From positions 24,056,001 through 24,120,000 of the forward strand of contig OZ249447.1 in NCBI GenBank assembly GCA_965235115.1: a DNA stretch of 64,000 nucleotides, written 5' to 3'. The translations under genes were made by a program, and so were the position numbers. Numbering within the stretch: the first letter of the stretch is position 1; each line of letters starts with the position of its first letter. The notes beneath the pieces are model-generated. The model did no database searches. It had not been told where the DNA came from and was given only the letters and a program-made list of their open reading frames with translations. Below, one piece after another: positions 3,401 to 33,400 of the stretch. The DNA is from Laetmonice hystrix. Lineage: Eukaryota.

Positions 3401-6400
3401 ATTATTCATCAATTGCGTTACATTCTCATTTAATAGTACAGTGAAAAAAAAACAGTTACAAGTATTTCCGCTTCAATATACTGATGTATTTGTAATTTCT
3501 TTGAAATATTCAAACATAATTTCCCATCAGTCATCCACTGGTGGTGCATGCAATCTGAGAATTAGAGTATCTAATTGACGTGGGTCCGAAGACGTTGCAA
3601 AATTCTCATTAGGATCCTCAACTACCATGCATTGTGTAATGCCAAAGTATACTGTAACGGAAACGAATAATTCAGCACCTTTCTGCACAAGAGTTAATAA
3701 ACGATGACATCTTGTCCCTCCGAGGCCGGAGTGTGTGGGTGGTCTGATGTTTTCCCCTGTCTGAACTCATTGTCATCTTGTTTTACAAGATCATCAGATG
3801 CTGTCTTATACTGTAACCGCGTTAGACTGACTAAAGTACGACCCTCAACCCCGATATCGAGGTACACTGCTTCAGGTATTTGCTTCAAAAGAAATAATTC
3901 TTAAATCATCCGACAGGTTGAAAACCCATCGATACACGTGATGGTCTCAGGTTATACCACGGCCATTATAACCCACTGTTCTCAGGTCGTGTCTTTCTCG
4001 ATCAATGAAACAATGTTTTTGCTCCTATTCTTGAAACCTTTTGATTTTTTTTCTTTCTTTTGTACATACTGTCATGATTGTACTGTTGGTTCCTTGTGCT
4101 TGTGCTTGATGTTTTCACTGCAGATGACAAACTAACAGAAATTGTAAAAGAAAGAAACGTTTCCAAATAGTTTTTTATTTCTACAACAGCTCATCTAGCA
4201 TGCTTCTATGACCAGAGACAGTAGAACCCCAGGGCCACGTGCTGACGAGCCACTCTCCCAGCCAGCCAAACTCATCTCTGCTGCCTCCCTGGAACCCCTT
4301 GCAGCTCTCTGACAGAACCATAGAGAGCTACTTTGTGGAAAGCCATGCCTATCAGCAGTTCATATTTCTGGAATTTCTATCAAATGGTTAAAAGTACCAT
4401 GCCGTATCGTGTCTGGCCGTTGTGCTGTATTAACCGTGTTCTAAGGTCATGGCTACTGACAATCCATCAGAACACGTGTCCCTGGGTTCTACGAGCATGT
4501 CGACCCTCTCCTTCCGATGTTTCGTTTCCATGACAGATCAACAACTCCAACATCATTTTAAAGTCACCAGTAAACGAAGGTATTCTCAAATATCATTTAG
4601 TCACGCTTGACTCCAAACTTTTCGAACCCTTGGCAACAGCAACTGATTGCAAGCGACCAACTCGACCTGACGGAGATCAAGATAAATCTACCAGCCATCA
4701 GTATATTCAGTACACAAGCTTCACTATCAATTATTGGAATACAAATCCTATGCGCAACCTAAAATCATGTGTCTGCAATCATATAAACAACAGGAACTAA
4801 ACCAAGGTGCATTGCAGTCAGTTGCCAGCTGTCATCGATAGCTTAGGTCTTTGTCCCTTTGTCCACCCATCACACACTCATCCCTCATCTGGTGTTCCAC
4901 ACTTTACCACATATTGGAGCGGACTTTATCATTTCATTTGCAATCAGACTCACTTTGGAGCGTAGTGAGGCCTAACTACCGGTATCGTGAAATCATTTAC
5001 ACAGGTATTGTTGATCTGAAATTCGACTGCGTCAGGTTGCCTTCCCGTTGAGCACACAATTCCCCTACGAACAACAAATTTGTATTGACTTTTGCAGCAG
5101 TCGCCTATTCTATCTACCATGCAATCTTCATGCACATCTCTCAACTGTGTGTCAACACTGTTGACATATTTATTATGTGGTGAAATAACGAGAGCAAGCA
5201 TGATTTAATGTCATCATCATTATGATCATATAATCATCATCATTCTCCCATAATGTAATTGTATCCAGGAATGAGCCTTTAACGTCGGCATGTATTGTAA
5301 GGGTGTCAGAGTTGAAAAGCATTCAGTACAAAGTGACCTACAATTATTCATTACCCCATTATTCGAAAAATTCTGCATTTCATATGAACTACTTTGTTCG
5401 CTGTGTCTTCTGAATAAGTAAATTGCCAAAAGAATTCGACGGGCGGCGAGAGGTCGGGTTTCTCATGCTCTGACCAACGGAAGGAAGGACCACTGGGTAG
5501 AGTTTCAAAGCATCCAACACTTTTAGGGGGATACACGAAAGAAAGAGACTTGTCACTCAAATATTATTACGCCTAAGGTTATGTGGTTTCCTAAAGCTTT
5601 CTTTCAGTCATTACTTCATACTGTGTCATCAAACCTTATAGAGCTGGGCCCGGTTCACAAACAAAGTCAAGTCAATTTTAATTGACTTGAAGTCAATTTT
5701 ACTTGAATCTGATTGGTTAAAATGGATTTCAAGTTAATTAAAATTGACTTGACTTTGTTTGTGAACAGGGCCCAGATCTTATTATGTAGAGTTCTATACA
5801 TGGTGAGTACGATTATGGCTATGTGATTTTCAAACCTCGCAAATCTTACCTTTCATTCTCTACATTTCCTGTTTTGTACTGAAGGAAGGGCTTTAAGATA
5901 TTCTTCATGGTCAAATAAGTCCAGATATCAATAATTCACATTTGAAAAAAGCTTTAGCAGTCCACGAACCTAAGCGAATTGTTCTTTCTGGACTGTGAAG
6001 TTCTATTTGCCTCAGTTGGCGAACGATGAAGCTAACCTGATTGTCTTGTTACCATATAATGTCATTATAATGTCATTATGACCATTGAGTAAAAAGAATG
6101 TGGTTTTGGACGGTAATGTAACGCGTATGGAGGGTTAAACACTTTGACTGGTACATGTGCGACTTTTGGGTGGGGTTTTATTCCTTAGGTGGGCCATCCC
6201 TTAAAGTGTTTGATGTTTGGCGTTTGGAAATGAAGGTTATTTTGTAGCGTTACCACCAGTATAAAAGGGAAGGGGCAACAGAAGAAATGAATAGTTTTGG
6301 TGTCACTGTTGATGAACTGATAGCAAGGAGCTAATGCGGTGTCACCTCTTGTTAAATAGGGTAATCGGGTTTCAGCATTGCTGGTTGCGCCGCTAGGTGT

Positions 6401-9400: not shown

Positions 9401-12400
9401 ACATGTTACCCTGGGGCCCGTTTCACTATGCGAGGACATCCCCAAGTGGGGACATCCACGATTCAGAGACATCGTTTCAATGTTTGTGTTGGCTTACATC
9501 TATCATCATAGAAAGCGTTGCCTTGTTGGCCGTATTCCAGGTACTTGAGTAACATCTCCACCTTATCCTGCCGGGTTTCATTGGTGTCCATCTTGCAGTA
9601 GTTCCTTCAGTGGATATAATACAATGTATAACCGGCCGATGATAAGTCGTGTTTTAAAGGAAACCATGTCAATACGTGGTTATAGGTGTAGACTACATGG
9701 GTCACAACTATCTGTGTCAGGATCCAACTGTTTATAGTACCTTGTTTCTGAAGCAGTTTCAGTATAATCATCATCAAATCACCATCCTCTTATAACAGAC
9801 TACTTACCAGTCAGCAATTTTGACTTCACTAGATTTGAATGCTGAAAGATCTGGAAATACATACAACAATGATACTGTGACAACAGAAGCCATGTCCAAG
9901 TCTGTTATGAATGGCACAAACTCGATAAGGCATTATGACGTTACTAAAACTACAGGCAAGAATCACACGTGGTGGGAGTTAGATCTAAGTGTAAAACAAC
10001 ATGAGAAAGTTTACCGGTTTTAGCAACAAGACGACGCCGACCATCCAACCAATTCATACCATATCCTTCAGGTAGAGCTATGCCAAGACTGGAACACCAA
10101 ACACAGGTCAACTTTAAAGGCAATCGCGCCATTTTAGATCTGACGTTGAAAAAGCTTAGATATTTGGTAGAAGTGAAGATCTATATGTCTACTTTACAAA
10201 AACATGAAAAAAATATATGGTCACCGTGGAAACCTGAGAGTGACAGCACTGCCACCTTGTGGCCAATTTGGAAATCAGGTAGAACTATTCAACACAACAT
10301 AAATTCAGTTTTTTTGTATTTATTCACAATCATAAATCACTTGACGACACCAGTTTAATCAGGAGACATGGGTTAATGAAAATACACCAAAGAAATTAAA
10401 AAAATGCAGGTTTTGGGGTGTTTCCAGGATACATATAATTCAACTGAAATGTTAATTTTCGGCAGTCAGATCGGTAAATCGTGTGCCAAAAAAAATTCAA
10501 CGTTGACAATTCTTCAAAATTTCAGCAGCGTATGCCGGAGAGGCTGCGTTATCACATGCACAAAGAAAAAATAGGGGTCACCGTGCTTATTTTTTTAGTA
10601 ACAGGCTCCGTTTACCCCGGAGTTTGGCCAAAAACTGATTTTTTACACGTCAAATGTAGGAATTTCTATTTTTATGCAAAATAGACATCCTAGTTATATT
10701 AAATATTAAAATCCTTTCAAATATTGACGGTTTGAAGATATGGATATGATTACAATACGTGATTAAGGTAAGCAGTAATTAATTATTGAATGCCTTTTAA
10801 CGATAGGTCAATAAGTACATGTAACAACTTTACCTGAAAGGTGTATTTTCTACATCTGTGAAAAAGTAGTTATTTTGTCGTATGGAAACCCTTTTCTGGA
10901 AAAGTAAAATATATACCATATGTCTCCATGGTCTGAAAAAACTGCACCAAGTCATAGCAACGTTTATTGCAAGATTCACTAACTGTCTGAACGTCAATAT
11001 CTGTATAAATATTTCATTTTAAAGTACGTCCTAAGCCTCTTTAAGCTATATTATCTTTTAGCGATTATCAAGTCTTTCTGCTAGGTGAGGCACAGTTTAT
11101 GAAAACATAACGCAGTAAGACTGGATTTGGAGCCGACTACCCGACTATCTCGACGGGAGAAACTGAGAGAATAACACCAGCTGATCTCGGAGAAACAATG
11201 ATAATACTCACCATGTTGTCATAGTGCACCTTCACGGCCATGCTGAATTGGTTAGTTCTTCGGTCTATCATCATCTGCCTCAACTACAATATACCATGTG
11301 GCAACATTAATCGAAAATCTCCTATCTCTGCCTCACAATGCACCAACAATTTCTTTATCATTTTGATGCTCCTTTCCCTGACCCAGAAGAAAGTTTTATA
11401 ACACAATTGATAACAATTACGACTTGTTTCGATCTCTCCTTGACTGACGAAAACCTTCAGGCGAGCCAATAATTCACACAACATAAGATGGAGGATGCGA
11501 GAACCGTGATTGCTGTGACATGCGCCACTTCGTTTAGACGTTGCCACAACAATACAAAAAGAGGTGTTTAAAAAGCCTGCTTACCTTGATGTTGTAGTTT
11601 GGCCTGGGAAAGCCCCCTATGGATTGCTGAAAGGTTTACAGAGTACCATTATTAGATATGCTACAACAGTGATCAGGTTTCTGGGACTATTTCAAGGACG
11701 CTGATTCTATATTTGAAGTAAGAGCAAAAGTCATCTCTCATTTCTGAATCCTATTATTTGTCTCGACAAATGTAGAAAAAGACCACCTAAGAACGTGCTG
11801 TATAAATGCAAAAAAGTTATGAAAATTAACACAAAACTGATACACAGTTGATATAATTACTTGCTTGTAGAAAGCCTCGAACATTACGGGGGATGCAGAT
11901 AAATAGGTGCTTGAAGATCATTAAAGTGCCAAAAGCATTCTCTTTAGTTACATTTCTCTCCAGCAAAATCTATACAGGTACAACATGATTTCATCTGCGG
12001 AGTCATATAAAAGTTCATCTAAAACTGTGAAGACATTCCCGTGATTTTCTGCATGACCAACCGAGGGTAAATCAAACTTGTGTCGTATTTTGAGACATCC
12101 GTTTGTGACCTCGGTGCTGCAACCTACGGGAACAAATGACCCAATTCTACATCTATATTTGGGCTGCAAGGCTTACAACTGATGCATAACATATATCAGG
12201 TGTTCTCAATATCTACCAATAACAACTGAAACGTGTCATCAGCATCCATATACCCAAGGAGGATTCTACCTCTATGTAGGTGACATTGATATCCTGTAAC
12301 CAGACAAGCAGTGGGTTTGTCAGCTTGGGTAAGCTAAGAACACATATTGAATTTGTACACAGCAAGTCTGTACAAAACGGCATCCACTGCTGAATGACGG

Positions 12401-15400
12401 TCACGCCAAAATACTTCTCAACATGTGACCACGCAAAAATATCTCATGCATCTAAGTGAAAGGCCGTGGCTTTATTAACAATTCAAACACTGGATGGGTC
12501 GATGGATAATACAGAGCTTCATTGAGAGCCCTGGTAATCTACCCTGTTATCTACCCAGCTCTTAGATGAAGTAGGAAAATATCTGCTTGAAATATGCGGT
12601 TAAATTGTGTTGGGTGGCGTGGCTCGAGGCCAGCTTGGCCAGTGATTCTACACGAAAAAATCATTCTTTGGCAACTTTCTTTGACGGGTGTACCCGTATA
12701 GATTACCAATACGTTTTCTTCGCCCATGGCCAAGTTTCCTCGCTCAAAACCTAGTACAACCAGCTTTCCAATGAGTGGGAATTGACGAGGAAAACTTGTT
12801 ACTTTTTTTTTTATCCCTACACGGGCACTTTTTTCTCGTCAATGAAGACTTGTCAAGGAAAACTTGTTCGTGTAGAAGATGCAGCAGTAACGGGAGATAG
12901 CTAAATGATCCGTACCTCGACTCCCTCCTCGAGCTCCACCTCGGCCAGGTCCACACTGTTGTAGTTGGGCTTCACCTGATCCTTCTCCTACAACACAATA
13001 CCCAATATAGACGATCAGCTAACACCATCACAGATCGCAGCAACACAATAGTCAATATAGACCAGGCGATCAGCTAACACCATCACAGATCGCAGCAACA
13101 CAATAGTCAATATAGACTAGGCAATCAGCTAACACCATCACAGATCGCAGCAACACAATACCCAATATAGACGATCAGCTAACACCATCACAGATCGCAG
13201 CAACACAATACCCAATACAGACCAGGCGATCAGCTAACACCATCACAGATCGCAGCAACACAATAGTCAATATAGACTAGGCAATCAGCTAACACCATCA
13301 CAGATCGCAGCAACACAATACCCAATATAGACGATCAGCTAACACCATCACAGATCGCAGCAACACAATAGTCAATATAGACCAGGCGATCAGCTAACAC
13401 CATCACAGATCGCACCAACACAATACCCAATATAGACGATCAGCTAACACCATCACAGATCGCAGCAACACAATACCCAATATAGACCAGGCGATCAGCT
13501 AACACCATCACAGATCCTAGCAAAACAATACCCAATATAGACCAGGCGATCAGCTAACACCATCACAGATCGCAGCAACACAATAGTCAATATAGACCAG
13601 GCAATCAGCTAACACCATTACAGATCGCAACAACACAATACCCAATATAGACCAGGCAATCAGCTAACACCATCACAGATCCCAGCAAAACAATACCCAA
13701 TATAGACCAGGCGATCAGCTAACACCATCACAGATCGCACCAACACAATACCCAATATAGACCAGGCGATCAGCTAACATCATCACAGATCGCAACAACA
13801 CAATACCCAATATAGACCAGGCGATCAGCTAACACCATCACAGATCGCAACAACACAATACCCAATATAGACCAGGCGATCAGCTAACACCATCACAGAT
13901 CGCAGCAACACAATACCCAATATAGACCAGGCGATCAGCTAACCTCATCACAGATCGCAGCAACACAATACCCAATACAGACCAGGCGATCAGCTAACAG
14001 TAACATCATCACAGATCGCAGCAACACAATACCCAATACAGACAAGGCGATCAGCTAACAGTAACATCATCACAGATCGCAGCAACACAATACCCAATAT
14101 AGACCAGGCGATCATCTAACACCATTACAGGTCGCAGCAACACAATACCCAATATAGACCAGGCGATCAGCTAACCTCATCACAGATCGCAGCAACACAA
14201 TACCCAATACAGACCAGGCGATCAGCTAACAGTAACATCATCACAGATCGCAGCAACACAATACCCAATATAGACCAGGCGATCAGCTAACCTCATCACA
14301 GATCGCAGCAACACAATACCCAATACAGACCAGGCGATCAGCTAACAGTAACATCATCACAGATCGCAGCAACACAATACCCAATACAGACCAGGCGATC
14401 AGCTAACATCATCACAGATCGCAGCAACACAATACTCAATACAGACCAGGCGATCAGCTAACACCATCACAGATCGCAGCAACACAATAGTCAATATAGA
14501 CCAGGCGATCAGCTAACACCATCACAGATCCCAGCAACACAATAGTCAATATAGACCAGGCGATCAGCTAACACCATCACAGATCCCAGCAACACAATAC
14601 TCAATACAGACCAGGCGATCAGCTAACATCATCATAGATCGCAGCAACACAATACCCAATACAGACCAGGCGATCAGCTAACACCATCATAGATCGCAGC
14701 AACACAATACTCAATACAGACCAGGCGATCAGTTAACATCATCACAGATCACAGCAAATTGGCGCACGACAATCTCATAGCTTTCACTATGATCAGGCAG
14801 ACAAAGGTTTCACATTAGCTTGGCTCTATTTGCGGTCCAAGTTTAAAGCCTCTAAGCATCTAAGCAATACGCCCCATGATGATAGATTGTCGTACATTAG
14901 GCTACACAGGGTCAAATATTTCCTCCATTGCCTCCCTTACAGAGTTAGGTGACTTTAGACGTGCCTCGTCGTATGTACATTATAGGCCGTATGAGTGACC
15001 AATAAAGTCAAGACACATGTATGCTGAACGAAACGAATATTTTAGTACTTACAGTTGGTCTGAAGTCAGGATGGAATAGTATATATCCATTGTTGGTGAT
15101 CGCAAACGCGTATCCATTAACTCCCAGCTGAAAGAGAAATCAGAAGGGACGTATGACTTCCCACAGAGGTGAAAACTAGTGGAGGTAATGCACAATAAGG
15201 AAGCTAGAGGCATATACTCTTCACCCATTTGTTATTTTTTATTAAGGCAAGTAAAACACCGTATTTACCTTGTACTTAGGCGTCAGCTTAATAAGTTCCT
15301 TTAAAGGAACATCAGTTCCCATCACACCTAGAAGGATACCATCCTTCTTCTACAAAGAGAAGTCACATCATTCCCAAATTAACTGACAGTCCGACAATTA

Positions 15401-18400
15401 ATGTATTCATTAATATTTTGTCTTTACATGGTCCAATGGTTTACAGAGATTTCAATAAATGAAAAATAATGAAGCCACCAGTAATGCACCATCAGTTCAT
15501 TTTCTTATTTATAAAAATCAATATAGGAACCCATGCTTTACCATCGCCTCGCCAGGTTGGATAGTTCCTACGGTGGGGAAAATTCAAGTTTCTATCACCG
15601 ACATAGAATTATCAATATTTCCTCTCACGTACCGTTTCATTTCGACGATCAAATACAGGCTGCGCAACGGACGTCATCAGACGTAGGCCCTGGTAACATT
15701 TCAATATACCACTTCAAATTAGTAAACAACAATTACGACACACTAATCGGCTGACAAATCCTACTGATTGTAGTGACAATCAGACTTTTCCGACCATGTC
15801 TGCGTACAGATACTCCAGTATAGATATTATGTCCATAGACATACGTACGCTGGTTAAAATAAATGTAGAGATCAGTAATGTTCATAATATTAAGTGCATT
15901 CCCGGTTGCATAGACCCGGCGGTAACACATTCCATTAAACAAACAAGATTCTTAAACAAACAACCAATTCGGTGAATACGAGTATTATGAAATCTAACGT
16001 CTGCTCGATGCAGAACTGATGTTTTCTTAAACCTCTTATATTTATGCTTCGCTATACCATTTAAAGAAATACATATGAAAAAGAAGAAACATAATAATTC
16101 TTTATAACAATTAAACAATTGTCAGAAAATTTCAATCGTCATTGTCGTGATATTCAGGTCTTGCAGTTGAATATTTCAAAATAACACTTCTTCTGTCCAC
16201 CTCGTTTTTGGTCCACGGAAAGTGGTGGCATTATCGTTACAAAATGAAGCAATGTTTCAACCATGGTGTACCCGTAAGGAGAGATGTGGTATTTATCTAC
16301 ACAGACCACTGCTTCCGTAAGCTATATGTATACATATAGCCTTAGTTCTGGTTCGTTGTCGGAAGCAAACGCACTGTAACAGCCTGCATCAAATACAACT
16401 TTTCATATACTACTTTCAACCGTTCTTTACATCAAATGTCACTTTTCCTATAGAACTCTCGGCCTTCCTTTATATCAAATGTCACTTTTCCTATACTACT
16501 CTCGGCCTTCCTTTACATCAAATGTCACTTTTCCTATAGAACTCTCGGCCTTCCTTTACATCAAATGTCACTTTTCCTATACTACTCTCGGCCTTCCTTT
16601 ACATCAAATGTCACTTTTCCTATACTACTCTCGGCCTTCCTTCAAATTAAAGGTCACTTTTCCTATACTACTCTCGGCCTTCCTTCAAATTAAAGGTCAC
16701 TTTTCCTATACTACTCTCGGCCTTCCTTCAAATTAAAGGTCACTTTTCCTATACTACTCTCGGCCTTCCTTCAAATTAAAGGTCACTTTTCCTATACTAC
16801 TCTCAGTCTTGCTTTAAATTAAAGGTCACTTTTCCTATACTACTCTCAGTCTTGCTTTAAATTAAAGGTCACTTTTCCTATAGAACTCTCGGCCTTCCTT
16901 TACATCAAAGGTCACTTTTCCTATACTACTCTCGGCCCTCCTTTACATCAAAGGTCACTTTTCCTATACTACTCTCGGCCACCCTTTACATCAAAGTTCA
17001 CTTTTCCTATACTACTCTCGGCCTTCCTTTACACCAAAGGTCACTTTTCCTATACTACTCTCAGCCTTCCTCTACATCTACCAGCACCAGTATAACAGTC
17101 AGGTTCTCACTTCATCGGTCTCCAATGCCATGTTTTTCACAACTTAAGCTCTTACTCAAGTCAGTCCAACCCGGACCCAGGTGCGGTCAGGTGGAGGTAA
17201 CATAAACTGACGTGACCACCTTATTTACAACCAGTGGCAGCATGTGGGCTCACTCACTACCGGAGACAAGGTTTTATAAAACACCTGACAATTATACCCT
17301 GAATCTGGTAAGGTCTAGTTAGGTTACCGTTACAAACCCTCAAATCGGCCGCGTTTTGTCATTTAACAGGATGTATGCTTAATTACGACCAATTACTGAA
17401 CAATGTACCGTGATGACCACTCTCCATCTCTCTCCTTTACACAAATATTGTTTCTCAAATTGAGAGCATACTATCCCGGCAATGACGTCAGACCCATAAA
17501 TCTGATTAAAAGAGTCGACCCATGCTAAGTTATTGTTTAACCTTAATCATAACATGCAATAAATCTTAAAGCTAATAAAATACCACTATGTACGAACTTA
17601 GAAAACCTTCGAACCATTTGGGTCAGGTTACAACAGTACTTGTATGATATCCAACCCATGAAACATGTCACATGTCACAGTTGTAAATCGGTCTCTTGGC
17701 GTATCAAACATTTAGACAGTCAGCAAGTAAAAGTCGCCAAGAGTTGTGTCCATTCATTGGTTTCAAAAACACACACAGTGAGAAAGAAAAGGCTGGTAGA
17801 GTTCAGGTCCAATACCATTCAGTCTCAGATACGTAGTGTTGCAGTGTCGTGATGACGTTTGTCAGAGACTGAACAGATGAGCACGAGTATGAGACGTATG
17901 CTGGGGCTCTGCCATGCCGGGATCAGCTACTGAAGGGGTGTCACCGACTCAGCACAGGGGAATGGGAGTGTTGGGGAGGGGGCGTAACGCACCATACATA
18001 CTGACTGCCTGATTGACTGACGGACGGATTCCACCAAAGCTCGACACTGACGCCACCTGGGGGCAGGGCGGGGTATACAGCGTTCATGCAGAAACCAAGG
18101 GAACCATTTTCGGGATGACCTCGGGGAGAGTATCAGCCCTGAGGTTTGGAATGGCACCACCTTCATAACAATTAGAGCCACCATCCGGAGATCACCAACC
18201 CTATCTGTCGGGAGGGGAAGTGGGACCCCAACCCCGGAGAAATCCTTAACTGATGGACTCGCTAAATTTGGAGTTATTTCAAGGGCACGGCAGAGACCAA
18301 GGACAAAGGAGAATTGAGATTAGAGATGTAAGTTTGACCACAGAGGCCTCTGCACTCCTGCAGAGTGCGTAGCAGCATCAGAAGTGCGCTCACAAATGCC

Positions 18401-21400
18401 AGGAAAACGTGCAACTTTAACTGAAATCTTGAGGACACATCGGCGATATCGAATTGAGAGCCCATTTCAGAAATTGGCCAGACAAGGTATTCAAAACATT
18501 TGAGTTGTGGATGTTAGTGGCAAGGATGAGGAAAATACAGCGACTTAGTAAGGAAAAGTTAGTGACACTCTTTACGCATGCCTTAAAAAGCTACCGTAAA
18601 TTTCATGAAGTATTTCTGGCGACCTATTATTTTTAATTTTATATTTAATTCTTAAACACTTAAAAATGTATCCAAACGAGAGAAGACAATGTTTTGAACA
18701 TTTTAGATTAATGTGTTCAGTTATAAATGTTATGCCCGGCGTCATTTTATCTTCAGAGTTGAATACTCCGTTTAAATGCCAGGTAGTGAAAAAGTTAATT
18801 TCCAAAAGAATCGAATGGTAGCCATGTATCTGTGGGCCGCTTGACGGGTTTGGGAGTCTCGGTACAAGTCTGGATCAGCAGGCAGAGGTTGGAAACGTGA
18901 GGCGGCGGACACCTGGCGGGACCATGCTGCGCCGGGTGGGTGGGCTGAAGCGGGGGGACAGATAGCCAGTTACCTGAGCATCATGCTGCAAAAATGTGAA
19001 GGCAACGGAGTAAATTGGTTCCAACCACCACCACCACCACCATCACCACCGATCCGGAAAGCAAAGAAAGTAATGATCAACAAAACATTAGCGATCATGG
19101 GGCAATCGAGGTGGTAAAACCAGGACACAGTTCGGCAGCTCGCCGCGCATGTCGCTGACATCGCAGCGCGCCACCTATGTGTCACGACGGAAATCAACCT
19201 TAATAGCATGGCACCAATTAATGCATGATGAAAAACCAGTAGCCAAAAATGTAAGTAGAACTTTGACACAAAATTAATGCAACTCAACCAGTGATAACAC
19301 TTGTGTGTTACCACTTTGCAAAAGGCAATATGTGTGGTAGTAGCATATTCTATAAACACAATGATTTAATGACCAGCCGCTCATTACAAACATGTAGAAA
19401 ACTTTCGGACGGAACTAGCATGAGGAACGGTACTACTAAAAGTCAATGCAACATTACTGCTAAGTATATACACGTTATAAACGTGAGATTCTACAACAAT
19501 AACAGAAATGCTTTAGACCTATTGAATGAAATTCTAAGACATTGTAAGAAGTAAAACTTGAGTATCATAAGCTTATGCGACATCATCAGTATACTACGCA
19601 TGGCATCTCATATAAAACAAAATTAGCAAGCAAATGTTTGGAACACGCAAGGATTTGGGGCCATCAAAATACAACAGTAAAATATAATCAGTCTATAAAA
19701 ACCCCCATGGTGTTTACGTCGAGTGATGAACCTGCAAGATTATACTGTTAGAAACCTAAAGATCCTTGCATTAGGGTTACCACTATATCCACAATGACAA
19801 TACCGAACAGGTCGCAGTTATTACTGCATATCACTGCCATGCAAGATAAAGGTCATTCTTTTGTGGGTACACTTCATGGTACCAACGACACGAGCAGGAG
19901 AAGGAGGAGGAGAAGGAGGGGGAGGAGAAGGAGGGGGAGGAGAAGGAGGAGGGGGAGGCTCAGCAGGCCACACACACCCATGTTTAAAGAAAATCTGTTC
20001 AAATGTTGGCTCCGGCTAAGTGATTTGATCACCTGTCGTCTGTCGCCAATGACAACGGTAACCACCCGACCCAACATATTTAAGTCTTTCCACCAGTTTT
20101 ACTTGGATGTGTTTGACGAGGATATCTGTATATATACCGGTGCATGTTTTCATTTTATGTGTGTGAATGAATTCCATGATGTCCAACTTCTGCTTCCCCC
20201 ATCAACAAGTGATACTTTCTGTCCAGGTGCGAGTACCTTATAAATCACCGGACCAAGTCGTGGTGCTCATCAACAAGTGATACTTTCTGTCCAGGTGCGA
20301 GTACCTTATGAATCATCGGACCAGGTCGTGGTGGTCCACGAACGTGTTAACGTACCCATTCCAATATTTTGTAGACATATAACCTGAATACGAGGGGCGC
20401 TTGAAGTCGTGTTCTGTAAGGGGTGAGCTCAGCTCAAGCTCTCTATAACAACGAGTGCCGTTTTTTTATTTTCTGAATTCCAAGTGCAAACCTAAACCAG
20501 TTTATCAGCTACAAAATGTATCTTTAACATGAAAGAGTAACTCTCCACAGTCTATGTCGAGCGGATTGCGAGTGTTTGTTAGTGCGCTAACAGTCAGCTA
20601 ATCTAAGTTACTGCATGGTGGTCGTATACTAACTACGGCTAGCCTTACCCGCGGCCGGCCCTGTGCTGTGAGGGAGGGACGGAGGGAGGGGGACTGTGAG
20701 TCGGACTGTGTGATGGAACTGTCAACTCATGTATCTCGTGGCCCTCGCCATCCCGTAGGACCCTTCACAAAGGTGTCAACAGTCCTGATAGTCGTAGACC
20801 GGACCACATAGTCTGTAAAGCTTCCGTAAACGGTTTCCCATACACAGACACATCATAAATGAAGAGCCTCTGCTGTTTTACAGAAAGATGACTTTTACTT
20901 GATATTAAATCTGGACAGGTTAAATTATAAAGTCCATATGTATTTGATCCCAGGGTTTTTTCGTGCGGAAGGTTGCTACTATTATTGGTATCCATTCGAA
21001 CCTGACAGTGCTCAATCCTGACAGAAATACATGAGCTGCACAGGGGCTTACGTACCTTACCAAACTACTTTTCGTCATTGGACGTCATTTTTTGAATCAA
21101 CATTTATGTTTCTTTTACGTTTTACGTCCCTTTTCATGCTGTTTAAAGGGTTAAACTCTAAGGCCAAGGGTTGGAACGAGTAACATAAATATCTTAACAC
21201 TGCTATGGAAGTGGGGGGGACGAGACCTTGTGAATCATTCTCGATTGGATGGTATGTAGAGCACTGTCAGGTTGGATCTGCCGTGAGCTGCAGGGTCACA
21301 CCATACGATGTGGCTGTGTCACCACTCACTAGGTGTGTCGAGCCTTCAATATCAGACGCAGTCGCTACACGTCCTGCTAAGTCTGGACATTTCTACAATC

Positions 21401-24400
21401 AGTCTATATCCTACCCTGGATTCTGTTAACAGAGCTACACAAACCTAATTTTGGGGGTGCTGCTAGGCAACATGGACCACCGCTTTTATATTGCTTGAAC
21501 ACCTTGAACTGTTCCCCAAACGGATACATGTACGAATGTATAGTTCTCTCCAAATTATGCTCAAGAATAAGCATAATCAACCCTTTCTAAATCTTCTAAA
21601 TATCCTTCTATAGTTAGGCCCAGTTTTGTAAAATACACTGATGTCAACTTTGAATGAACGTAGACCATAAGGTTTGAATATTGCCTAGCAGCAGCCAATG
21701 TGTGTTGTCTGTTGTGGTCACAAACCTGGTCCTCATGGGAGGAGTCTGCTGACATGTACACAGATGTCCATATTGTTATGTTTGGTTTAGAAATGACCAT
21801 CGGCCTGCTCACTGTTTTCACAAATGCCTGCAGAATGAAGAAAGAATGAAATAACGAAAAAAGGGCAACAACAGCCGCGCAATTCTGCGCTCTCACAGCA
21901 AGACTGAGAAAAAAGGAAGTCAAGAAAAGTCGTCGGGGCGAGCATTCCAGTGTGGCACAAACATTGAAAGTTACGACACGTGACCAGAAATTTGAAATGA
22001 ATTACAGTTAATACCGTAAACCATAAAATATTTGAAACCTAATGGCGTACTGAAAGCTCGATATCTTTTAACTGATTCTTCAATATAGTATGTGTGAGTG
22101 TGTACTCGAGAAACATGAACATGTCCAATGATATCGGAAGCTTTCAAATATGTTACGGTTCACAGTTAGTACATGGAAATGCAAACCATCCATCCAGTAT
22201 ATTGATTTAATCATGTTTTACCACAAAGAGTTCTAGGGATCTTTCAAAAGCATGGTTTGCACTGACATGCCTGGCATGCGCATTCCGCACACATATCACG
22301 AGCAAGGTGTACACGTGGTAAAAGCATGAAAGCTTCTCAGTGGCGCCACCTAGATCTGAAATAGAAATGTCACTCTTCTCGGCCAGTCACTACGAGAAGA
22401 AAATTGAAGGAAAAAAAGGTGTGACTCATACAGAACAGGGAGGTTGTAACCTCGACGAGACAGGTACTGTGACAGGACAACAAGAGTTCTGATGTCGTTT
22501 TATCAGTGACCTACCGCCTCGTCAATGTATACACTGGTCCAGGTAGTTTGATATTTACGCTTAATCACCATCGGACGACTGATGACATGGATGTACTCCT
22601 GTAAAATCACATTTCTCTTTAATAAACACATCAAGATGGTTTCTTCTATTCTTGTCTTCAGCGCATACAAAACATTTCTTACTAAACAATAGGATATGGC
22701 TCCCATTGTGTTTGTAGCAAGTACTTATGGTCTGGGAGAAATGTACAAATGTACATTTATCCACAAGTGTACAATCGATTTAGTGCAAAATTTTAAAACA
22801 AAAAGACTTAAAATCTAAACACGTACAATCGAGTTCTACAAACACCTATGCACATGATATATAGCTGCAACTCGAAAACATCAAAAATAGAAAGTGTTTC
22901 ATTACACCTAAACATCGCATCTTTTTATATTTATATATCAGGATCACATTAAAACCTGTAGGACAGTCATCCGCATTATCCGGGAACATTCCGTGAATTC
23001 ATTATCAACAAGGAAAACGGAGTTTGTCGTGGCTAGCATAAGTACTTTACATCAAGCTAACTTACATAAACAGTACCTGCTCTAAACAAAAAACATTATA
23101 CTCTCAAGCTTCAGTTATTGTGTACCGGTATCAATGTTATATTTCACCCTAAACCCAACACAGCTATCGCACACAATATATTTCTTTCCCTTTACGTCGA
23201 TAGCTGTTGTCATCATAAGCTAAGCATTACAGCACAATAGCTTCTAATTTTTGTAACTTCAAATCAATAAATCAATGCTCTTTGAGATAAAGGCATTTCA
23301 TTGCAAGACATATTCATTCTATTTATAGCGTTGCAAAAGGCTGACTGCAGTCGTAAAAACACAGGATATCTTCCGATCCGTTGATAGCGACTTACCTGAA
23401 CCTTTTCCTGGACATCGGCAAGAGTTGAGATATGTGAGTAGTAACCTGAAACAGACGTACATGTATCATGGAGAGAGCTCACAAACCTAATACATGATAT
23501 AATGATAACTGCACATCTTGTATTGTCTGGAAGAACAAAACTAAAGTACACCGCCAATTTTCTCCCAAAAATAACTGTCCGTAGACGGATGTCATACATT
23601 TATCCATTTAGATACGGATGTCATACATTTATCCATTTAGAGACGGATGTCATGCATTTATCCACTTAGATAGATAGATAATTTATTGATTAAAAATCTT
23701 AACATAAAATACAAAGTATGTAATAAAGTTTGGTGAGCAAGGCAGACAACAGTAATAAAGGCAGACTTCAAGACGCATTTACGCATTTACGCCATTCTCA
23801 TGAATTCATTGTTGACAAATGTTCATATCTGTCAAGTATCTTTACCGACACAAGAAACTTCGCTTATGTTGCAACAACTGCTACCCTACCCTGCTTTCTG
23901 AATCTATTTACATACTTCAAATGCATTTGATCTCACCTTTATTGGCGCATGCCATCCATTTCACCTGTTTCGAGTCTCCCACCTCTCTCCCTATCAAGTA
24001 CGTGAAGACGCGCACCTAAACAGGAGACAAGGCATCCACATTGAGACATCAAGAGACATATAAAACAATACCTGCTCGGAATCAAAGTACACAATCCTCA
24101 ATAGGTGAGTACTAAGTGCCTCCGAATATCAAAGAAAAGACAGAGGTTTGTGACGGAGATCGACTTACATTCTTTTCGGGCCAGTTGTAGCGGTTGAAGA
24201 TGTGTTCATAAGTTTCTGGCGCTCCGTCAGTGATGAGCATGATGGCTCGGTTACACATGGTTCCACGGTTAGTGAGGTTCATCTGGATTAGACACCCACA
24301 TCAGCTCATCACTATACCACTCCGACAGAACGTATAGCTCACGGCCTACACACGACCTCTATCAAAGTTCTGAGGGCACTAAACACCGGGAAGGGAGGAA

Positions 24401-27400: not shown

Positions 27401-30400
27401 ACTTGCCTTCTTGTTGTCAGCGTTTGCTTGTACTAAGGTTCCGTTGAAACATTCATCTACATACATGGCCTCTTTGGAAAACTGTGGAAGCCAAAAAAAG
27501 AAATAGGCGTCAGATACGTGGTGTTGGCTGGCCCTCTCCCAAACTGGACCGAAACTGGGCGAATATATGGCCTTCGGCAATCAGTTATTCCCTTTTACTT
27601 AGAGTATACATCCTCGAGGTCACCAGCCCCGTCCATTAACTACCGATGCCATATCCCGGCGAATATAACGTTTGAAAGAGGGTGACGCGTGCCCCGACCG
27701 AAGGATAGATGCGTGGATACAAGGAACGTGAGAGTTATCTATATTCGGATATAGATGCGTGGATACAAGGAACGTGAGAGTTATCTATATTCGGATATAG
27801 ATGCGTGGATACAAGGAACGTGAGAGTTATCTATATTCGGATATAGATACGTGGATACAAGGAATGTGAGAGTTATCTATATTCGGATATAGATACGTGG
27901 ATACAAGGAATGTGAGAGTTATCTATATTCGGATATAGATGCGTGGATACAAGGAACGTGAGAGTTATCTATATTCGGATATGGATGTGTTAATCTATCC
28001 CTTACGGAACTGACCACTGCCCGTGATTTGTACGATTTGTGTGCTCAAGTCACGGTCGTCTGATCACGGTACCCACACGACCATTTTCTCATAGTCCCTC
28101 ATCCTTCAACTTACTTTTGACCTCTAACATCCCCACAGTGCTGATGCTGGCTGACTGAAGGGCAAGAAAGCTAGAGTAAATGCGGAATCAGTTTTCTCCT
28201 GATCCTCGTTATCACTTGCCTTTATGATGTTGAAGAAGTCGTCATCGCTAAGGGTGTCAAGAATTTTCTCAACAGTTGCCTTAGCAATTTCCATGCGAAG
28301 TCCAGTCATGCTTCCGCTGGCATCAAGCAGAATGACTATGTCTTTAGGTGACGTGGCTGCTTGAATATACCTGTAAAACCACGGCCATTTATACCAGTAC
28401 CGAGAAACATACTTGAAAATCAATCACATCAACAATCAAATATATTTTGTTCTCTACCGCTAACAACCTCCTGTCCCACATTTCTCATATAGTGAGACTA
28501 ACTATGCACTCCGTCCCCTGAGATCAGTCCTTTTACAATTAGAAACATTTCTCTCACAGTTACTCATTTACGAAAGTAAACTAAGTTTTAAGTTTTCTTA
28601 ATTCTATTGCAGAAACAAAGTAACATTGTAAAATTTACAACTAATGACAGATATTATGTTTGGTAGCTTAGTTTTACATTGATGAATGATTTGACCGATT
28701 CTGGTAATATCGGTCATAGTAAAATAGACTTTGAACAAATCAAGAGAGGAATGACGGTTCTCTATGCAACAATCGAGGAGATCGAGGAGACATAAAGCCA
28801 AGTGTCATGTCAAATGTCGATTCCCTTCTCAATCTCTCTTTTTATCATTAACTGTTCTTTTGAAACAGTTTTCTGTGAAGCCAGAGCTTCATAATTAGTT
28901 GGTGCACTGGGAGGTTCAAGGCAAAGCAAGGAAGTACAAAGATCTTACCATCCCCTTGTTCTACAGTCATATCTGTCAATCTTTTCCCTTTGTGAATCCA
29001 CAGTTTTCCAGAGCGTACCTGGTGATGATCACGGTAGGTGGAAGGGACAAATCGACAGGGTTAGACAGTTGTGTGCCTGTAGCACCACATACTGCCCACA
29101 TGGCACCGCACATCAGTCAAGGCCGAAACAAATTACAAAGTATCAGGGTCTGGTCACTAGGGGGCGGGGCTGGGTATGATGAGTACGGAGAGCTGTCACC
29201 AGGGGGCAGCAGCAGGATCGCCCCCGCCCCAGGTGCTAACCATTCCGTGTGCTCAACGTTGATGGCTGTATGGTTTCCTGTTCAATACCACATACGGCAG
29301 ACGCTATTCATGCCTGGCCTATATCCTCAACGTCCCGAATACACAACATATTCAATGTCGAATTTAATATCACTTACATCAGGTTACCCGATGATTAATG
29401 AATTCAAATACCTCCTCGCATTAAAAATAAATGTCAATATTCCTCGACAACTTTATCAGCGACGTCAGGTCAAATCTTTGGGAGAGGGGGGCCTAAATTA
29501 GCTCCTACACCATTACCAGTGTAGGGTTTCCTTTGTAGTGAATATACCAGTAGACCTTGACTAGTAATTTTGCTTAACTGAGGAGGAGGCGGCATGGTTG
29601 GAATGCCCTACTCAAAAAAAGCCGTGACCACAACTGGTTGGTAATGTCCACCGAAAAACGTGCCGCCTTTCTCGCTGAGAGTCTACCGGCCACTAAAGGC
29701 TGATCGATGGGTCCGGTTTCAATGCTTCTCATGTTGGCACAATTTTTTTCTTTTTCTTTTGTTGGTACAACCTGGTCCAGTTTTAATGATTATTCTTGAT
29801 TATGATTAAACTCCAAAGAATAGAGTTTGGTGTGTGATGGCAGGATGAATTGAGAGTGACGAACAGGCATGAATACATCTGTCCTTCTGTCCACCAGCCA
29901 TCTACTGGTGAAGGGATCCTAGACGGCGGGACGTGATCCTAAACCTAGGGGGTCCTCTTGTCTCTAAGTCAGGCACATCACCGCTTACCTACTTACAAGG
30001 ACTAACTTCACAAGGAACAAGACTTGGGTTCAGAGGCCCTCTCACCAACAAGTGCCACATCGTACTTCTCGATCATTAATTAAAGTTCCAAGACAGAGTA
30101 ATCACAACTCTGTAATTGTTTTTTCCCTGGCTCTAAAGTTTGTGTAGCACTTCTTGGGAAACCAGTTCTTTGCAGTTGCCTACTGGGTTCCAAGTGGGTG
30201 GCACCCTACGGATCAAACGAAATTTATCTATGTGCAAGCTTGGGGTCATGGTCAAACCAAGGATATGGCTACAAGCAGAGGGTCACAGTCTCAGGTGTAA
30301 CAAAGGTTAGTGAGTGCAAAGCAGGTTAAATGATGGGGCAGTTTCAAAAATAGGACTTACCATCCACGTGTTCTACAGTCATACAAATCAACCCCGCCCC

Positions 30401-33400
30401 CGGGCCACTGTATGCCTAAATACAAAGGACGATATTCTCAGAACAAAACGAACTCAAGATCAAACACAGCGTGAAGAGATTGGTAGCAGCCATGCAAGAA
30501 GCTGGTGCTTGTCAACACCTAACCCTTTCATACCCTTTCCAAATCCTTCACCAGAAATTTCCTCTTTTTTCCTGATTAACTGTACAAACAACCCATATCA
30601 TGTAAAAATATCCCCAAAATCATCCTACAATGGCATGTAATGTATCTTGAATATGAAAGGGCCACACCAAAACGCAGCATAAGATAGGTTAATTAATTAC
30701 TAAAACGTTTCCATGGCTGCTCTTTGGCTGCTTAACGTATTTTTTTTTCATTTATAAACCACTGTCGTTCATTTCACGTCTTAATACAGGTTAAAATCAA
30801 CACTGGCTCCGATGTAGATATTGAATGCAATGGGTATTTGATAAATCAGTATGTTGAGGTTATACCTAGACCAATGGGAAAGAAAACAAACTTAACCATT
30901 TCGATCATATCAATGGTTTTAACAGGTCTATATTCCGTATGCTTATTATGCTTAAAAAATTGCAGTTGATGTTCCATGATAAAAGAATAACTGTATTATT
31001 TTGGAATTCGTAGATTCCAGGCGGTGTAGTACTGCTATTTACTACCTTCATGGTATCGTAAACGCTCTATTTGGACATCAAAACTTACATTTGCTATTGC
31101 ATCCAATACGAAAAATTAAAAAATATATTTTAAAAAATTGACAACGTCTCCATAGAATAGAATACAATCTTTTAGCATTCTTAGCATATTCCATTTTTAA
31201 AAATCAAATTCAATTCATTAAGTTAATGACCACAAGATTTGAACTCAACTCTTTATTTTCATGAAGGCAGTAAAAACTTGCATATATAATGTTATATTAA
31301 ACAAAATCATGTAGGTTTGGTTATGTTTCAAAGCACACAGCATAACTTGGATTGAACTTAATTTAAGAAAAGGAGCAAACACAGCTGAATACACCGACCA
31401 TACTCTATCAGAGACCTACATTGCAACATACCATGAATCTCGCCCCAAAACCATGAAAATCAGGCACTTCGGATACTTGTCAATCTCAAAGACCAAGAGT
31501 TTCATTGCTGTGGTCTCTTTGGTGATAAGTAAGCATTTACATAAATAATTTTTTAAAACGTAGCACTTTAATATATAGCATGCCTACGTCATGTTTTAAA
31601 ACTTTCAGCAATACGTCTTCATCTCGACCACTTATATATACATGGACCGATCAAAATGCCCATCCTCAATTATCATAATTTCTGCGCTCTGTGCCCCCCC
31701 CCCGCCGCCGCCATTACCACCACTCTGCTTGTCCCTTGCTTACTAATTTCACAGATTTCTGATAGTGTTTGGTCAACTGCACATGTCAACTGAAAGAAGC
31801 GGAACCACTATGTCAAAGCAACAAAAAGTGAAGTAAGTAAGATAACTCGGTGACGTGATCTGATGTGACCAGGTTCAGATATCTGATATTTCACATGGCG
31901 TGTCAAATTTGGAATGGTGGTCATCTGTTTGAGAATGCAACATGTGTGGGCGGGATCCCTCAAAATTCACATTATTACATTAGGGCCATCAGGGAAAATC
32001 TATGAACAATGGACAACAAATTGTTTTCATTACAGATATATTACCGGTACATGAAATATTCTGATGTAATTACAATAATGTTTGAACGCTGCAAGTTATT
32101 AATTCCTCGCCATATAATCCCCTCCAGTACTTTGTATTCTCTTTGATGCAAAGATTTCAATCTCTGGTATGATTATACCAGCTAGGGCACTAGATAAATT
32201 AATATTTATGGCAGAATCACTAACATGTTGTACACCATGAAGAATTATACTGATTGCAGTACTGAAATTCTTAGATATGTTTGCCTCAACCATATACAAT
32301 GCAAATGAAGGAAATATCCTTTGGTATTTTAATCTATATACGCTGTAGTTCTAAAATCGTACGTTTCGAAATGATATCGTCGTGCGCAAATATATTTAAA
32401 ATGTTATCTAACCTTCTAAAATCGATTTCTTTACTGTTAAAAAAGTAATTTTCCTCTTCAGTATGACTGTTGTAACTATAATATACTTCATTTTTTCCAT
32501 GATGAAAAGTGTTTGTTTTGGGTTTCTCCTCTGTCAACGTGATCTAAAGTTTCATCACACAGAAATACATTCTTCTTTCATACCAAATTAACTCAACCCC
32601 AATTGTTTTCTAAAAAGTAACCTTAAATTCCGTTGAACGCGCCTTCTTTGAAATCGAAAGTAACTCACCTGGAAAGTTGCGGAAAAACCCAGACGCACTT
32701 CCAAAATACTGCCATGTTAATGTTTTATCAACCTCATAATTTCTTCGGAACTGTTCGTCGAGTTCCTCGGACCAGGCCACGCCATTCAATACCTCGGCAG
32801 CTGCAAGAAATGAAACTTTGGATAAACTGCAGCACTCCAGATACTGAGGTGTGTGAGAGACACCGGGGCGACCACCGTTTCGTTCACAAATGATCCTGCC
32901 ATGGCCGCAATGTAGACTGATGGTCTGTAGGTGGCAGTTCTCTCCCCCGAGTCGTGGCCTCGAGGCACTGCCATCCCACAACCCGCCTCCTAGACTCCCA
33001 ACCAATGAGTTCTCTTACACTAGCACAGCGAATCCAGTCTACATGTGATAAGTAAGACAAATACCTGGGAAAAATAGAGGAGTTGTCATAATTGAGCGGT
33101 ATGAGGGCAAAGGTTCCTGGAACATGTTGCCACCTGCTCATGGCCAGAACTGTTTTGTTCTGTCAGCGACTTGTGGGGGTACGCAGATAAACTATACATA
33201 ATGGGTAATATAAAAAAAGACAAATGTCACGAGCAGTCTCCAGTTGCACGTGAACTGACTGACTGCATTAATTTGGCATACCGGTGGTCCTCCTTACGTG
33301 ATTCCCACGGTGGCCACAAGGTGGGGAAGGTTGGCTCAATCAGCAACTCTGTGCCATGTCAAGAATAACACTGGAACGGGATTACAGGGTCTTCTCACAT

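What the first reader, a model, noticed from the sequence alone, without database searches (positions are those of the whole stretch)
21726..22598. Tandem duplicated, probably mutually exclusive exons that swap part of the alpha2delta dCache_1 ligand pocket
Seen: two phase 0-0 exons 687 nt apart, both open and with splice sites: 12[29 protein letters not shown] and 12[35 protein letters not shown]. Either joins exon 11 to exon 13 in frame. The motifs are conserved while the rest has diverged, which suggests an old duplication under selection. Established (recalled, verify numbering): in alpha2delta-1 the WTNVYLD segment supplies Y450/D452 to the dCache_1 amino-acid/gabapentinoid pocket. 12A keeps Y-x-D; 12B has Y-x-S, a 6-aa longer loop and a new N-I-T sequon. 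Inference: including both would duplicate a structural element, so use is probably either/or, giving isoforms with different ligand recognition. I do not recall this arrangement in vertebrate CACNA2D genes.
Basis: partly seen in the sequence, partly recalled or inferred. Interest (0 to 1): 0.9.

Follow-up and report, generated by a model that had tools for sequence, protein, structure and literature searches.

The report
Conserved alternative exon pair in alpha2delta
An invertebrate calcium-channel alpha2delta gene has two old, still-conserved versions of the small exon that builds one wall of its amino-acid/gabapentin-type pocket, so it can probably make two pocket variants, though no RNA data were available to show which version is used.

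Summary
On the minus strand, exon 12A (22515-22598, 84 nt) and exon 12B (21726-21827, 102 nt) are open, lie 687 nt apart, have AG/GT borders and are phase 0-0. Either one joins exon 11 (23396-23445) to exon 13 (15633-15689) in frame.

They are each other's only close match in the 627-Mb genome. Synonymous sites between them are saturated, while the RPMV and WTSVY motifs are kept.

The main new result is that two metagenome contigs from related species (L019, L020) carry both exons in the same order. Both have intact frames and splice sites, and their 12B copies share the signature VY-x-S-A where 12A and all outgroups have VY-x-D. So 12B is an old, selected coding exon.

By alignment to solved alpha2delta-1, the exon encodes the dCache_1 strand carrying Tyr452, Asp454 and Ala455, which published cryo-EM work places in the gabapentin/leucine pocket.

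Mutually exclusive use is not shown. No RNA run was found, and the exon lengths do not enforce it. It rests on structural logic.

A second pair, 8A/8B, encodes the other half of the pocket. Its exclusivity is frame-enforced, and Lingula annotates it as isoforms. The scan flagged a further pair in this gene (s1-306526) and many such pairs elsewhere in this genome.

The parts
23396..23445 (-). Exon 11 (constitutive, upstream). It encodes (G)[16 protein letters not shown], the end of the VWA domain, ends in phase 0 and has donor gtaagt.
   Evidence: Sequence. Aligned to homologues. Orthologous exon in L019 at 9648-9698 and in L017 at 6236-6298.
22515..22598 (-). Exon 12A, the canonical version: 84 nt, 28 aa, phase 0-0, with the VY-I-D signature. 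It encodes the return from the VWA domain into dCache_1 and the strand carrying the Tyr452/Asp454 equivalents.
   Evidence: Orthologues are 66-89% identical in protein in L016, L019, L020, L021 and L022, and the first 15 residues, which are all the L017 contig holds, are identical. pN is 0.14-0.18 against pS 0.69-1.05.
21828..22514 (-). Intron between 12A and 12B, 687 nt. It is far too long for steric exclusion, and no conserved docking/selector pairing was found in it.
   Evidence: The same intron is 285 nt in L019 and 1184 nt in L020.
21726..21827 (-). Exon 12B, the alternative version: 102 nt, 34 aa, phase 0-0, with the VY-M-S-A-D signature, an acidic tail and a strong pyrimidine tract before cag|.
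   Evidence: Orthologues are L020 3020-3127 (17/27 identical, VYLSAE + acidic tail) and L019 10370-10456 (VYMSAVG), both with AG/GT borders. No differences appear in three DNA data sets.
15633..15689 (-). Exon 13 (constitutive, downstream), [19 protein letters not shown], phase 0-0. It forms the next strand of the dCache_1 distal module.
   Evidence: Orthologue in L019 at 11696-11752.
15269..15349 (-). Exon 14, shared by both isoforms. Its GTDVP holds the equivalent of Asp493 of alpha2delta-1, the salt bridge to the ligand's amino group.
   Evidence: Alignment to alpha2delta-1. Role of Asp493/Asp491.
30361..30415 (-). Exon 8A (55 nt), (G)[18 protein letters not shown]. It carries the Trp225 equivalent and the Y-x4-R-x-W carboxylate-binding half of the same pocket. 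It is the first of a second tandem pair.
   Evidence: Orthologues in L017 (2078-2140) and L019 (4577-4639). Mapped to alpha2delta-1.
28949..29018 (-). Exon 8B (70 nt), (G)[23 protein letters not shown], the alternative to 8A. Both lengths are 1 mod 3, so including both or neither breaks the frame.
   Evidence: Orthologues in L017 (3516-3593) and L019 (6891-6965). Lingula anatina isoform X2 swaps this same exon against isoforms X1 and X3-X6.
28220..28370 (-). First VWA-domain exon, with the MIDAS motif D-A-S-G-S and donor AAG|gcaagt.
   Evidence: Pfam VWA hit. 815 homologues. Sequence.
32669..32800 (-). VWA_N exon, ...[18 protein letters not shown]. It has the alpha2delta-3-type Phe at the position of Ala217 of alpha2delta-1.
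   Evidence: Pfam VWA_N E=4.7e-17. Sequence. The Phe/Ala217 point comes from PMC9901441.

Best explanation
The gene is an alpha2delta-3-like auxiliary subunit of voltage-gated calcium channels, from an invertebrate that other notes of this scan take to be an annelid. [quoted passage not shown] Both copies have since been kept as coding exons.

The transcript most likely takes one copy or the other. 12A gives the canonical strand ...WTSVY-I-D-E-A. 12B keeps the structural core (RPMV, T-x-WT-x-VY) and the motif tyrosine. It replaces the pocket-lining Asp454 equivalent with Ser and changes the length and charge of the loop leading to the next strand.

Both isoforms keep the complete amino-acid-binding motif: Y-x4-R-x-W in exon 8, Tyr in exon 12 and Asp in exon 14. 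The expected effect is therefore a tuning of pocket shape, charge and lid. That would change ligand affinity or selectivity, or ligand-dependent trafficking, rather than abolish binding.

Shown here: the exons, their conservation across species, and their position in the pocket by homology. Inferred: either/or use and the functional consequence. Unknown: how the choice is made.
For: - Exact exon anatomy and in-frame joins.
- The two exons are each other's only close match in the genome.
- 12A against 12B gives pS 0.82-0.86 (saturated) and pN 0.41-0.43. Seven conserved residues use different codons, including AGT/TCT serine.
- L019 carries the order exon 11, 12A, 12B-like, exon 13. L020 carries 12A and 12B-like. 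All are phase 0-0 with AG/GT borders, and introns cannot be aligned.
- All three 12B copies have VY-[ML]-S-A. All six 12A copies have VY-x-D, as do nine of the ten outgroup homologues; Gordionus has IYHT.
- 12B evolves faster than 12A (pN 0.23-0.40 against 0.05-0.18) but still below pS, as is usual for an alternative exon.
- Every full-length homologue read has exactly one copy of the motif, so a protein with both would be unprecedented.
- By alignment to solved alpha2delta-1, exon 12 corresponds to ...[11 protein letters not shown]...QWTNVYLDA.
- The pocket is lined by Tyr452, Asp454, Ala455, Leu456 and Thr463, among others. The VWA domain is inserted just before this strand.
- A second pair in the same gene (8A/8B) is exclusive by reading frame, conserved in L017 and L019, and annotated as isoforms in Lingula.
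Against: - There is no transcript evidence at all. Two run searches returned only DNA runs, and the reads laid were genomic contigs without joints at the exons.
- Exon lengths of 84 with 102, 87 or 108 nt are all multiples of three, so 11-12A-12B-13 and 11-13 are also in frame.
- The intron is too long for steric exclusion, and no conserved competing RNA pairing was found.
- The tree of exon peptides is unresolved, so a single origin of 12B rests on the shared S-A signature, and the L019 copy is very divergent.
- The junction between exons 12 and 13 tolerates optional inserts of 3-24 residues in Branchiostoma, Lingula and Gordionus. An added cassette is therefore not structurally absurd.
- No 12B-type sequence was found among database proteins in the length ranges that could be searched.
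Confidence: 0.6

Rival explanations
1. 12B is an optional cassette that is added after a constitutive 12A (11-12A-12B-13). This would lengthen the loop between two dCache_1 strands, as the unrelated optional micro-exons at this same junction do in other phyla.
For: All exon lengths are multiples of three. Branchiostoma, Lingula and Gordionus isoforms differ by optional inserts of 3-24 residues exactly between the VY-x-D motif and GL-x-LMT.
Against: A loop insert has no reason to keep the core residues P-M-V and T-x-W-T-x-V-Y of the strand it follows, yet 12B keeps them in three species. No homologue has two copies of the motif. Two copies of a core strand would not fit the dCache_1 sheet; this last point is inference.
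Confidence: 0.12
2. 12B is a non-functional relic of a duplication (a pseudo-exon) that is not spliced into mature mRNA.
For: There is no RNA evidence for its use. It evolves about twice as fast as 12A at non-synonymous sites, and the L019 copy has lost the S-R of SRPMV. No database protein with a 12B-type sequence was found.
Against: The frame is open, AG/GT borders are canonical and a pyrimidine tract is present in three species whose introns cannot be aligned. pN is well below a saturated pS. The derived S-A signature is shared. Three DNA data sets show no disabling difference, and a 10-nt indel next to the acceptor still leaves cag|G.
Confidence: 0.06
3. The pair is used either/or, but what differs is not ligand recognition. 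The difference could lie in the VWA-to-dCache linker and the surface loop: glycosylation, folding or trafficking efficiency, or contacts with the channel alpha1 subunit or other partners.
For: Both versions keep the whole amino-acid motif (Tyr in exon 12; Y-x4-R-x-W and Asp in shared or paired exons). Most differences between 12A and 12B lie in the stretch before the strand (KRKYQT against SKPNIT) and in the tail after it. Asp454 is not part of the universal motif.
Against: The one difference that is fixed between all 12A and all 12B copies is at the pocket-lining Asp454 position and the residues after it, equivalent to Ala455/Leu456. The N-I-T sequon is not conserved.
Confidence: 0.22

Closest known systems
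Mutually exclusive, tandem-duplicated exons of channel genes, for example CaV1.2 exons 8/8a and 21/22, Drosophila cacophony pairs and SCN exon 5a/5b (PMC5059693, PMC11828482, PMC12772994, as listed)
   Same: Adjacent homologous exons of similar length and the same phase, ancient, both under purifying selection, each replacing a structural element of the protein with a variant.
   Different: Those pairs lie in the pore-forming alpha1/alpha subunits, and their exclusive use is shown by RNA. Here the pair lies in the auxiliary alpha2delta subunit, exclusivity is not shown, and the frame does not enforce it.
Alternative exon pair before the VWA domain of Lingula anatina alpha2delta-3, isoform X2 (XP_013401127.1) against X1 and X3-X6; this corresponds to pair 8A/8B of this window
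   Same: Same gene family, same kind of event, and the same ligand pocket: it encodes the Trp225 and Y-x4-R-x-W half. It is also present in this window, in L017 and in L019.
   Different: It is a different exon, it is exclusive by reading frame (55 and 70 nt), and it is already in a public annotation. The 12A/12B pair appears in none of the annotated homologues read.
Mammalian alpha2delta-1 with gabapentin or L-leucine bound (8FD7 and related entries; bioRxiv 10.1101/2022.12.05.519047; PMC8915833; PMC9901441)
   Same: Same domain architecture: VWA_N, VWA inserted in dCache_1, and a split amino-acid motif. Exon 12 aligns without gaps to the strand with Tyr452, Asp454 and Ala455.
   Different: The protein here is of the alpha2delta-3 type, with Phe at the Ala217 position. 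The review takes that residue to exclude gabapentinoids and bulky amino acids, so the ligand is probably a small amino acid. The searches found no report of an alternative version of this strand in mammalian alpha2delta genes.
Optional micro-exons between the VY-x-D strand and the next strand in Branchiostoma, Lingula and Gordionus alpha2delta-3-like genes
   Same: The same junction of the protein is varied by splicing.
   Different: Those are added cassettes unrelated in sequence to exon 12. 12B is a homologue of exon 12 itself.

Membership tests
alpha2delta auxiliary subunit of voltage-gated calcium channels | VWA_N region followed by a VWA domain with a MIDAS motif (D-x-S-x-S) | tested here: met
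   Pfam VWA_N E=4.7e-17 and VWA E=1.4e-5 on single exons. D-A-S-G-S is present in the exon at 28220-28370. The best full-length matches are named alpha-2/delta-3-like.
alpha2delta auxiliary subunit of voltage-gated calcium channels | First dCache_1 domain split by the VWA insertion and carrying the amino-acid motif Y-x4-R-x-W ... Y ... D | tested here: met
   YDCRTRGW is in both 8A and 8B. WTSVY is in both 12A and 12B. GTDVP is in exon 14. All were aligned to Y238/R243/W245, Y452 and D493 of alpha2delta-1.
alpha2delta auxiliary subunit of voltage-gated calcium channels | C-terminal VGCC_alpha2 region and delta peptide with membrane anchor | tested here: inconclusive
   Only a weak VGCC_alpha2 hit (E=0.035) was found on the exon at 1499-1774. 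The 3' end of the gene lies beyond the window start and was not examined. The clear VGCC_alpha2 hits at C13:23.81 Mb lie about 240 kb away and were not assigned to a gene.
Mutually exclusive exons derived from tandem exon duplication | Adjacent homologous exons with the same phase, similar length and their own splice sites | tested here: met
Mutually exclusive exons derived from tandem exon duplication | Both copies kept by selection across species | tested here: met
   L019 and L020 carry both copies with intact frames and sites. pN is below pS in all comparisons.
Mutually exclusive exons derived from tandem exon duplication | Transcripts contain one and only one of the copies | not testable with these tools
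   Both run searches listed only DNA runs. The reads laid were genomic contigs.
Mutually exclusive exons derived from tandem exon duplication | A mechanism that forbids joint inclusion: frame shift with decay, steric hindrance, incompatible spliceosomes, or competing RNA pairing | tested here: not met
   Lengths of 84 and 102 nt (87 and 108 nt in relatives) keep the frame. The intron is 285-1184 nt. The donors are ordinary GT (gtaggt, gtttgt), not the U12-type consensus. Inverted repeats are short and not shared between species. A fuller duplex scan did not finish. Regulation by splicing factors remains possible.

The most novel reading that the evidence does not exclude
One alpha2delta gene remodels both halves of its amino-acid pocket by splicing. 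Pair 8A/8B sits immediately before the VWA insertion and carries the Trp225 and Y-x4-R-x-W carboxylate side. Pair 12A/12B sits immediately after it and carries the Tyr452/Asp454 amino side and the lid loop. Together they would give up to four pocket variants, possibly chosen in a coordinated, cell-type-specific way. Different neurons or muscles would then carry calcium-channel complexes that sense different endogenous amino-acid ligands.
Probability: 0.2. Interest if true: 0.8.

Novelty: new member of a known kind. Interest (0 to 1): 0.6.

Why it matters
The amino-acid pocket of alpha2delta is the target of gabapentin and pregabalin. Its natural ligand and physiological purpose are still unclear (PMC9901441, PMC8915833).

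A lineage has kept two versions of a pocket-lining strand for a long time, next to a second exon pair for the opposite wall of the same pocket. This argues that the pocket is functionally important in invertebrates and is tuned by isoform. It also offers a natural pair of variants for binding and trafficking experiments.

For genome annotation, it shows that alpha2delta genes of these animals need isoform-aware models. An automatic model could include both copies or drop 12B.

Tried and rejected
- RNA evidence: two searches for sequencing runs were made, one with 1601 nt around both exons and one with 896 nt over exons 9-11. Both listed only three DNA runs of one sample.
- Reads: laying X1-X3 on 19000-24400 gave genomic contigs only. 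There were no joints at exon borders and no differences inside 12A or 12B. There was one synonymous difference in exon 11 (23417) and a 10-nt indel beside the 12B acceptor that preserves cag|G. With about 11 single-base differences in 3.1 kb, this has no power as a test of constraint.
- Protein database: two searches for 12B-type proteins, covering 80-255 aa and 36-115 aa candidates, found nothing. The index also missed P0165, which shares three words with 12B, so this blank is weak.
- A 47.7-kb contig of a close relative (P0001) could not be fetched. L016 ends 370 nt after 12A and L017 ends inside 12A, so neither can show 12B. L021 and L022 show 12A only, with 578 and 1162 nt downstream, which decides nothing.
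- A tree of the exon peptides (28 columns) was unresolved.
- Competing RNA structures: the inverted-repeat search gave only short arms not shared between species. My duplex-energy scan timed out.
- A suspected third pair at 1499-2227 was rejected. The similarity lies in intron sequence beside a four-copy 39-nt minisatellite, and the real exons are about 2096-2203 and about 1541-1733.
- Pfam finds nothing on the two short exons alone.
- Folding the two spliced isoforms was left out, because spliced sequences have no reference and would have had to be typed.
Full report
**What is there.**
The gene lies on the minus strand. The window is G000:C13:24056001-24120000. Reading the reverse complement gives the two exons exactly as described.
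- 12A is 22515-22598: 84 nt, 28 codons, acceptor ttttacag, donor gtaggt.
- 12B is 21726-21827: 102 nt, 34 codons, a long pyrimidine tract before cag, donor gtttgt.
- They are 687 nt apart.

Ten full-length homologues from a search of 1.84 billion proteins served as guides. With them the neighbours are exon 11 at 23396-23445, which ends on a complete codon with donor gtaagt, and exon 13 at 15633-15689, which starts on a complete codon. Either exon 12 joins them in frame. So would both together or neither, because 84 and 102 are multiples of three.

**Not chance.**
12A and 12B are 12/24 identical (E=5e-9). In six-frame searches of the whole 627-Mb genome each finds the other. The only further match is 12A's hit to one exon of a paralogue 11 Mb away, which is single-copy and has Y-M-D. 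DNA outside the exons does not align.

**What the gene is.**
Single exons hit Pfam VWA_N (E=4.7e-17) and VWA. The closest full-length proteins are named alpha-2/delta-3-like. They come from Branchiostoma, Asterias, Lingula, Tubulanus, Owenia and Gordionus. None is close, so the phylum is poorly annotated. Other notes of this scan call the animal an annelid, which I did not test.

- YDCRTRGW in exon 8;
- WTSVY in exon 12;
- GTDVP in exon 14 at 15269-15349.

The VWA_N exon has Phe where alpha2delta-1 has Ala217. PMC9901441 holds this residue responsible for alpha2delta-3/-4 excluding gabapentinoids and bulky amino acids. The likely ligands here are therefore small amino acids.

**Age and selection.**
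Between 12A and 12B, 82-86% of synonymous sites differ, which is saturation. Only 41-43% of non-synonymous sites differ. The conserved residues S, R, V, T, T, S and V use different codons, including AGT against TCT.

The decisive evidence is comparative. A scan of metagenome contigs with the aligned exons (A2) returned four loci.
- L019 (JAAUXT010079849.1) has exon 11 (9648-9698), 12A (10001-10084), a second copy (10370-10456, 87 nt, cag|...|gtaagt) and exon 13 (11696-11752), in that order.
- L020 (JAAUYG010087172.1) has 12A (1752-1835) and a second copy (3020-3127, 108 nt, cag|...|gtaatg).
- A profile search finds exactly two copies in the window, in L019 and in L020.
- The second copies read ...[10 protein letters not shown] and ...WTPVYLSAEADDDEEDK. 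Like 12B here (...[15 protein letters not shown]), they have Ser-Ala where all six 12A copies have Asp, as do nine of the ten outgroup homologues; Gordionus has IYHT.
- 12B here and in L020 are 17/27 identical, more than either is to any 12A (12-14/27). The L019 copy is more divergent.
- Introns cannot be aligned, and synonymous sites between orthologous 12A copies are also near saturation (pS 0.69-1.05). These are well-separated species.
- 12B changes about twice as fast as 12A at non-synonymous sites (0.23-0.40 against 0.05-0.18) but stays below pS.

A tree of the 28 alignable columns is unresolved. A single origin of 12B therefore rests on the shared signature and the shared position.

**Position in the protein.**
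Aligned to solved alpha2delta-1, exon 12 corresponds to ...[29 protein letters not shown]. The Asp is residue 452 in human chain 7mix_D and 454 in rabbit chains.

The gabapentin-bound structure lists Trp207, Val209, Tyr219, Trp225, Tyr238, Arg243, Trp245, Tyr452, Asp454, Ala455, Leu456, Thr463 and Asp493 as pocket lining. It names Tyr452 and Asp493 as the pair that holds the ligand's amino group.

[quoted passage not shown] Exon 12 is therefore the return from VWA into dCache_1, plus the strand with the motif tyrosine.

Both versions keep that tyrosine. With 12A, the distance from Tyr to the conserved P-V-F of the next strand is 15 residues, as in alpha2delta-1. With 12B it is 21 here, 16 in L019 and 23 in L020. 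12B thus changes the Asp454, Ala455 and Leu456 equivalents and the loop length, not the core motif. The N-I-T sequon occurs only in this species.

**Either/or use.**
This is the weak point. Both run searches gave only DNA runs. The laid contigs are genomic. The frame does not enforce exclusivity, the intron is too long for steric exclusion, and I found no conserved competing RNA pairing (my duplex scan timed out).

The argument for substitution is indirect.
- 12B conserves exactly the core residues of the strand it would replace (P-M-V, T-x-W-T-x-V-Y). A mere loop insert would not need them.
- No homologue has two copies of the motif.
- A second copy of a core strand should not fit the sheet.

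Against this, the same junction accepts unrelated optional inserts of 3-24 residues in Branchiostoma, Lingula and Gordionus. I put either/or use at roughly 0.7-0.75 overall. Of this, 0.6 is the pocket-tuning reading and the rest a non-ligand effect; the rival confidences overlap and do not sum to 1. I put a cassette added to 12A at about 0.12 and a dead relic at about 0.06.

**A second pair in the same pocket.**
Two exons lie between the VWA_N exon and the first VWA exon: 30361-30415 (55 nt...[18 protein letters not shown]) and 28949-29018 (70 nt...[23 protein letters not shown]).
- Both lengths are 1 mod 3, so both or neither would shift the frame.
- Both are conserved in L017 and L019.
- Lingula isoform X2 differs from X1 and X3-X6 by exactly this swap.
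- The exon aligns to ...[23 protein letters not shown] of alpha2delta-1, that is Trp225 and Tyr238-x4-Arg243-x-Trp245.

The two pairs flank the VWA insertion and meet in three dimensions at the ligand pocket.

**What is known.**
Full-text searches for alpha2delta or CACNA2D together with mutually exclusive or tandem-duplicated exons returned only work on alpha1 subunits and general surveys. The 8A/8B swap exists in a public annotation. I found the 12A/12B pair in no annotation and no paper. The scan has flagged another pair in this gene (s1-306526, not tested here) and many such pairs in other genes of this genome.

**Verdict.**
The pair is real, ancient and selected. Its place in the pocket holds by homology. 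Exclusive use and a change in ligand recognition are reasonable but untested. It is a new member of a known kind of system, of moderate to good interest for channel biology.

Noticed in passing
window 30361-30415 and 28949-29018 (minus strand): A second tandem pair of homologous exons (55 and 70 nt, both ending ...YDCRTRGW) sits just before the VWA domain. Inclusion of both or neither shifts the frame. The pair is conserved in L017 and L019 and matches the isoform X2 against X1 swap annotated in Lingula. It encodes the Trp225 / Y-x4-R-x-W half of the same ligand pocket.
   Followed up: partly
Proteins P0143/P0151-P0157 (Branchiostoma), P0062/P0163 (Lingula), P0075/P0158 (Gordionus): In three other phyla, annotated isoforms differ by optional inserts of 3-24 residues exactly between the VY-x-D strand and GL-x-LMT. 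This loop of the dCache_1 domain is a recurrent site of alternative splicing.
   Followed up: partly
window about 1735-1895 (minus strand): A four-copy tandem repeat of about 39 nt (gaagttacagttgacgccagtgttgtccattgctgtaggt) lies in the intron before the exon at about 1541-1733. Its open reading frame briefly looked like a duplicated exon but is not one.
   Followed up: yes
window 28218-28220 (minus strand): The first VWA exon appears to end with a GC donor (AAG|gcaagt) rather than GT.
   Followed up: no
window 21824-21830: One of the three DNA data sets (X3) carries a 10-nt insertion in the pyrimidine tract just upstream of exon 12B. After realignment the acceptor still reads tttcag|G. The three runs are recorded as one sample yet show run-specific fixed differences.
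   Followed up: partly
G000:C13:23813003-23814456 and G000:C13:13136107-13136184: Further alpha2delta-like exons lie on the same chromosome. There are clear VGCC_alpha2 hits about 240 kb from the window. There is also a paralogue exon-12 homologue (YAHVMARPLVTAKARRTAWTGPYMD) that is single-copy within 1.5 kb on either side.
   Followed up: partly
L021 329-424 and L022 1411-1506: Two further related contigs carry a 12A version with a four-residue insertion (…KQRNKPSRHTAW…) in the variable stretch before the strand.
   Followed up: no
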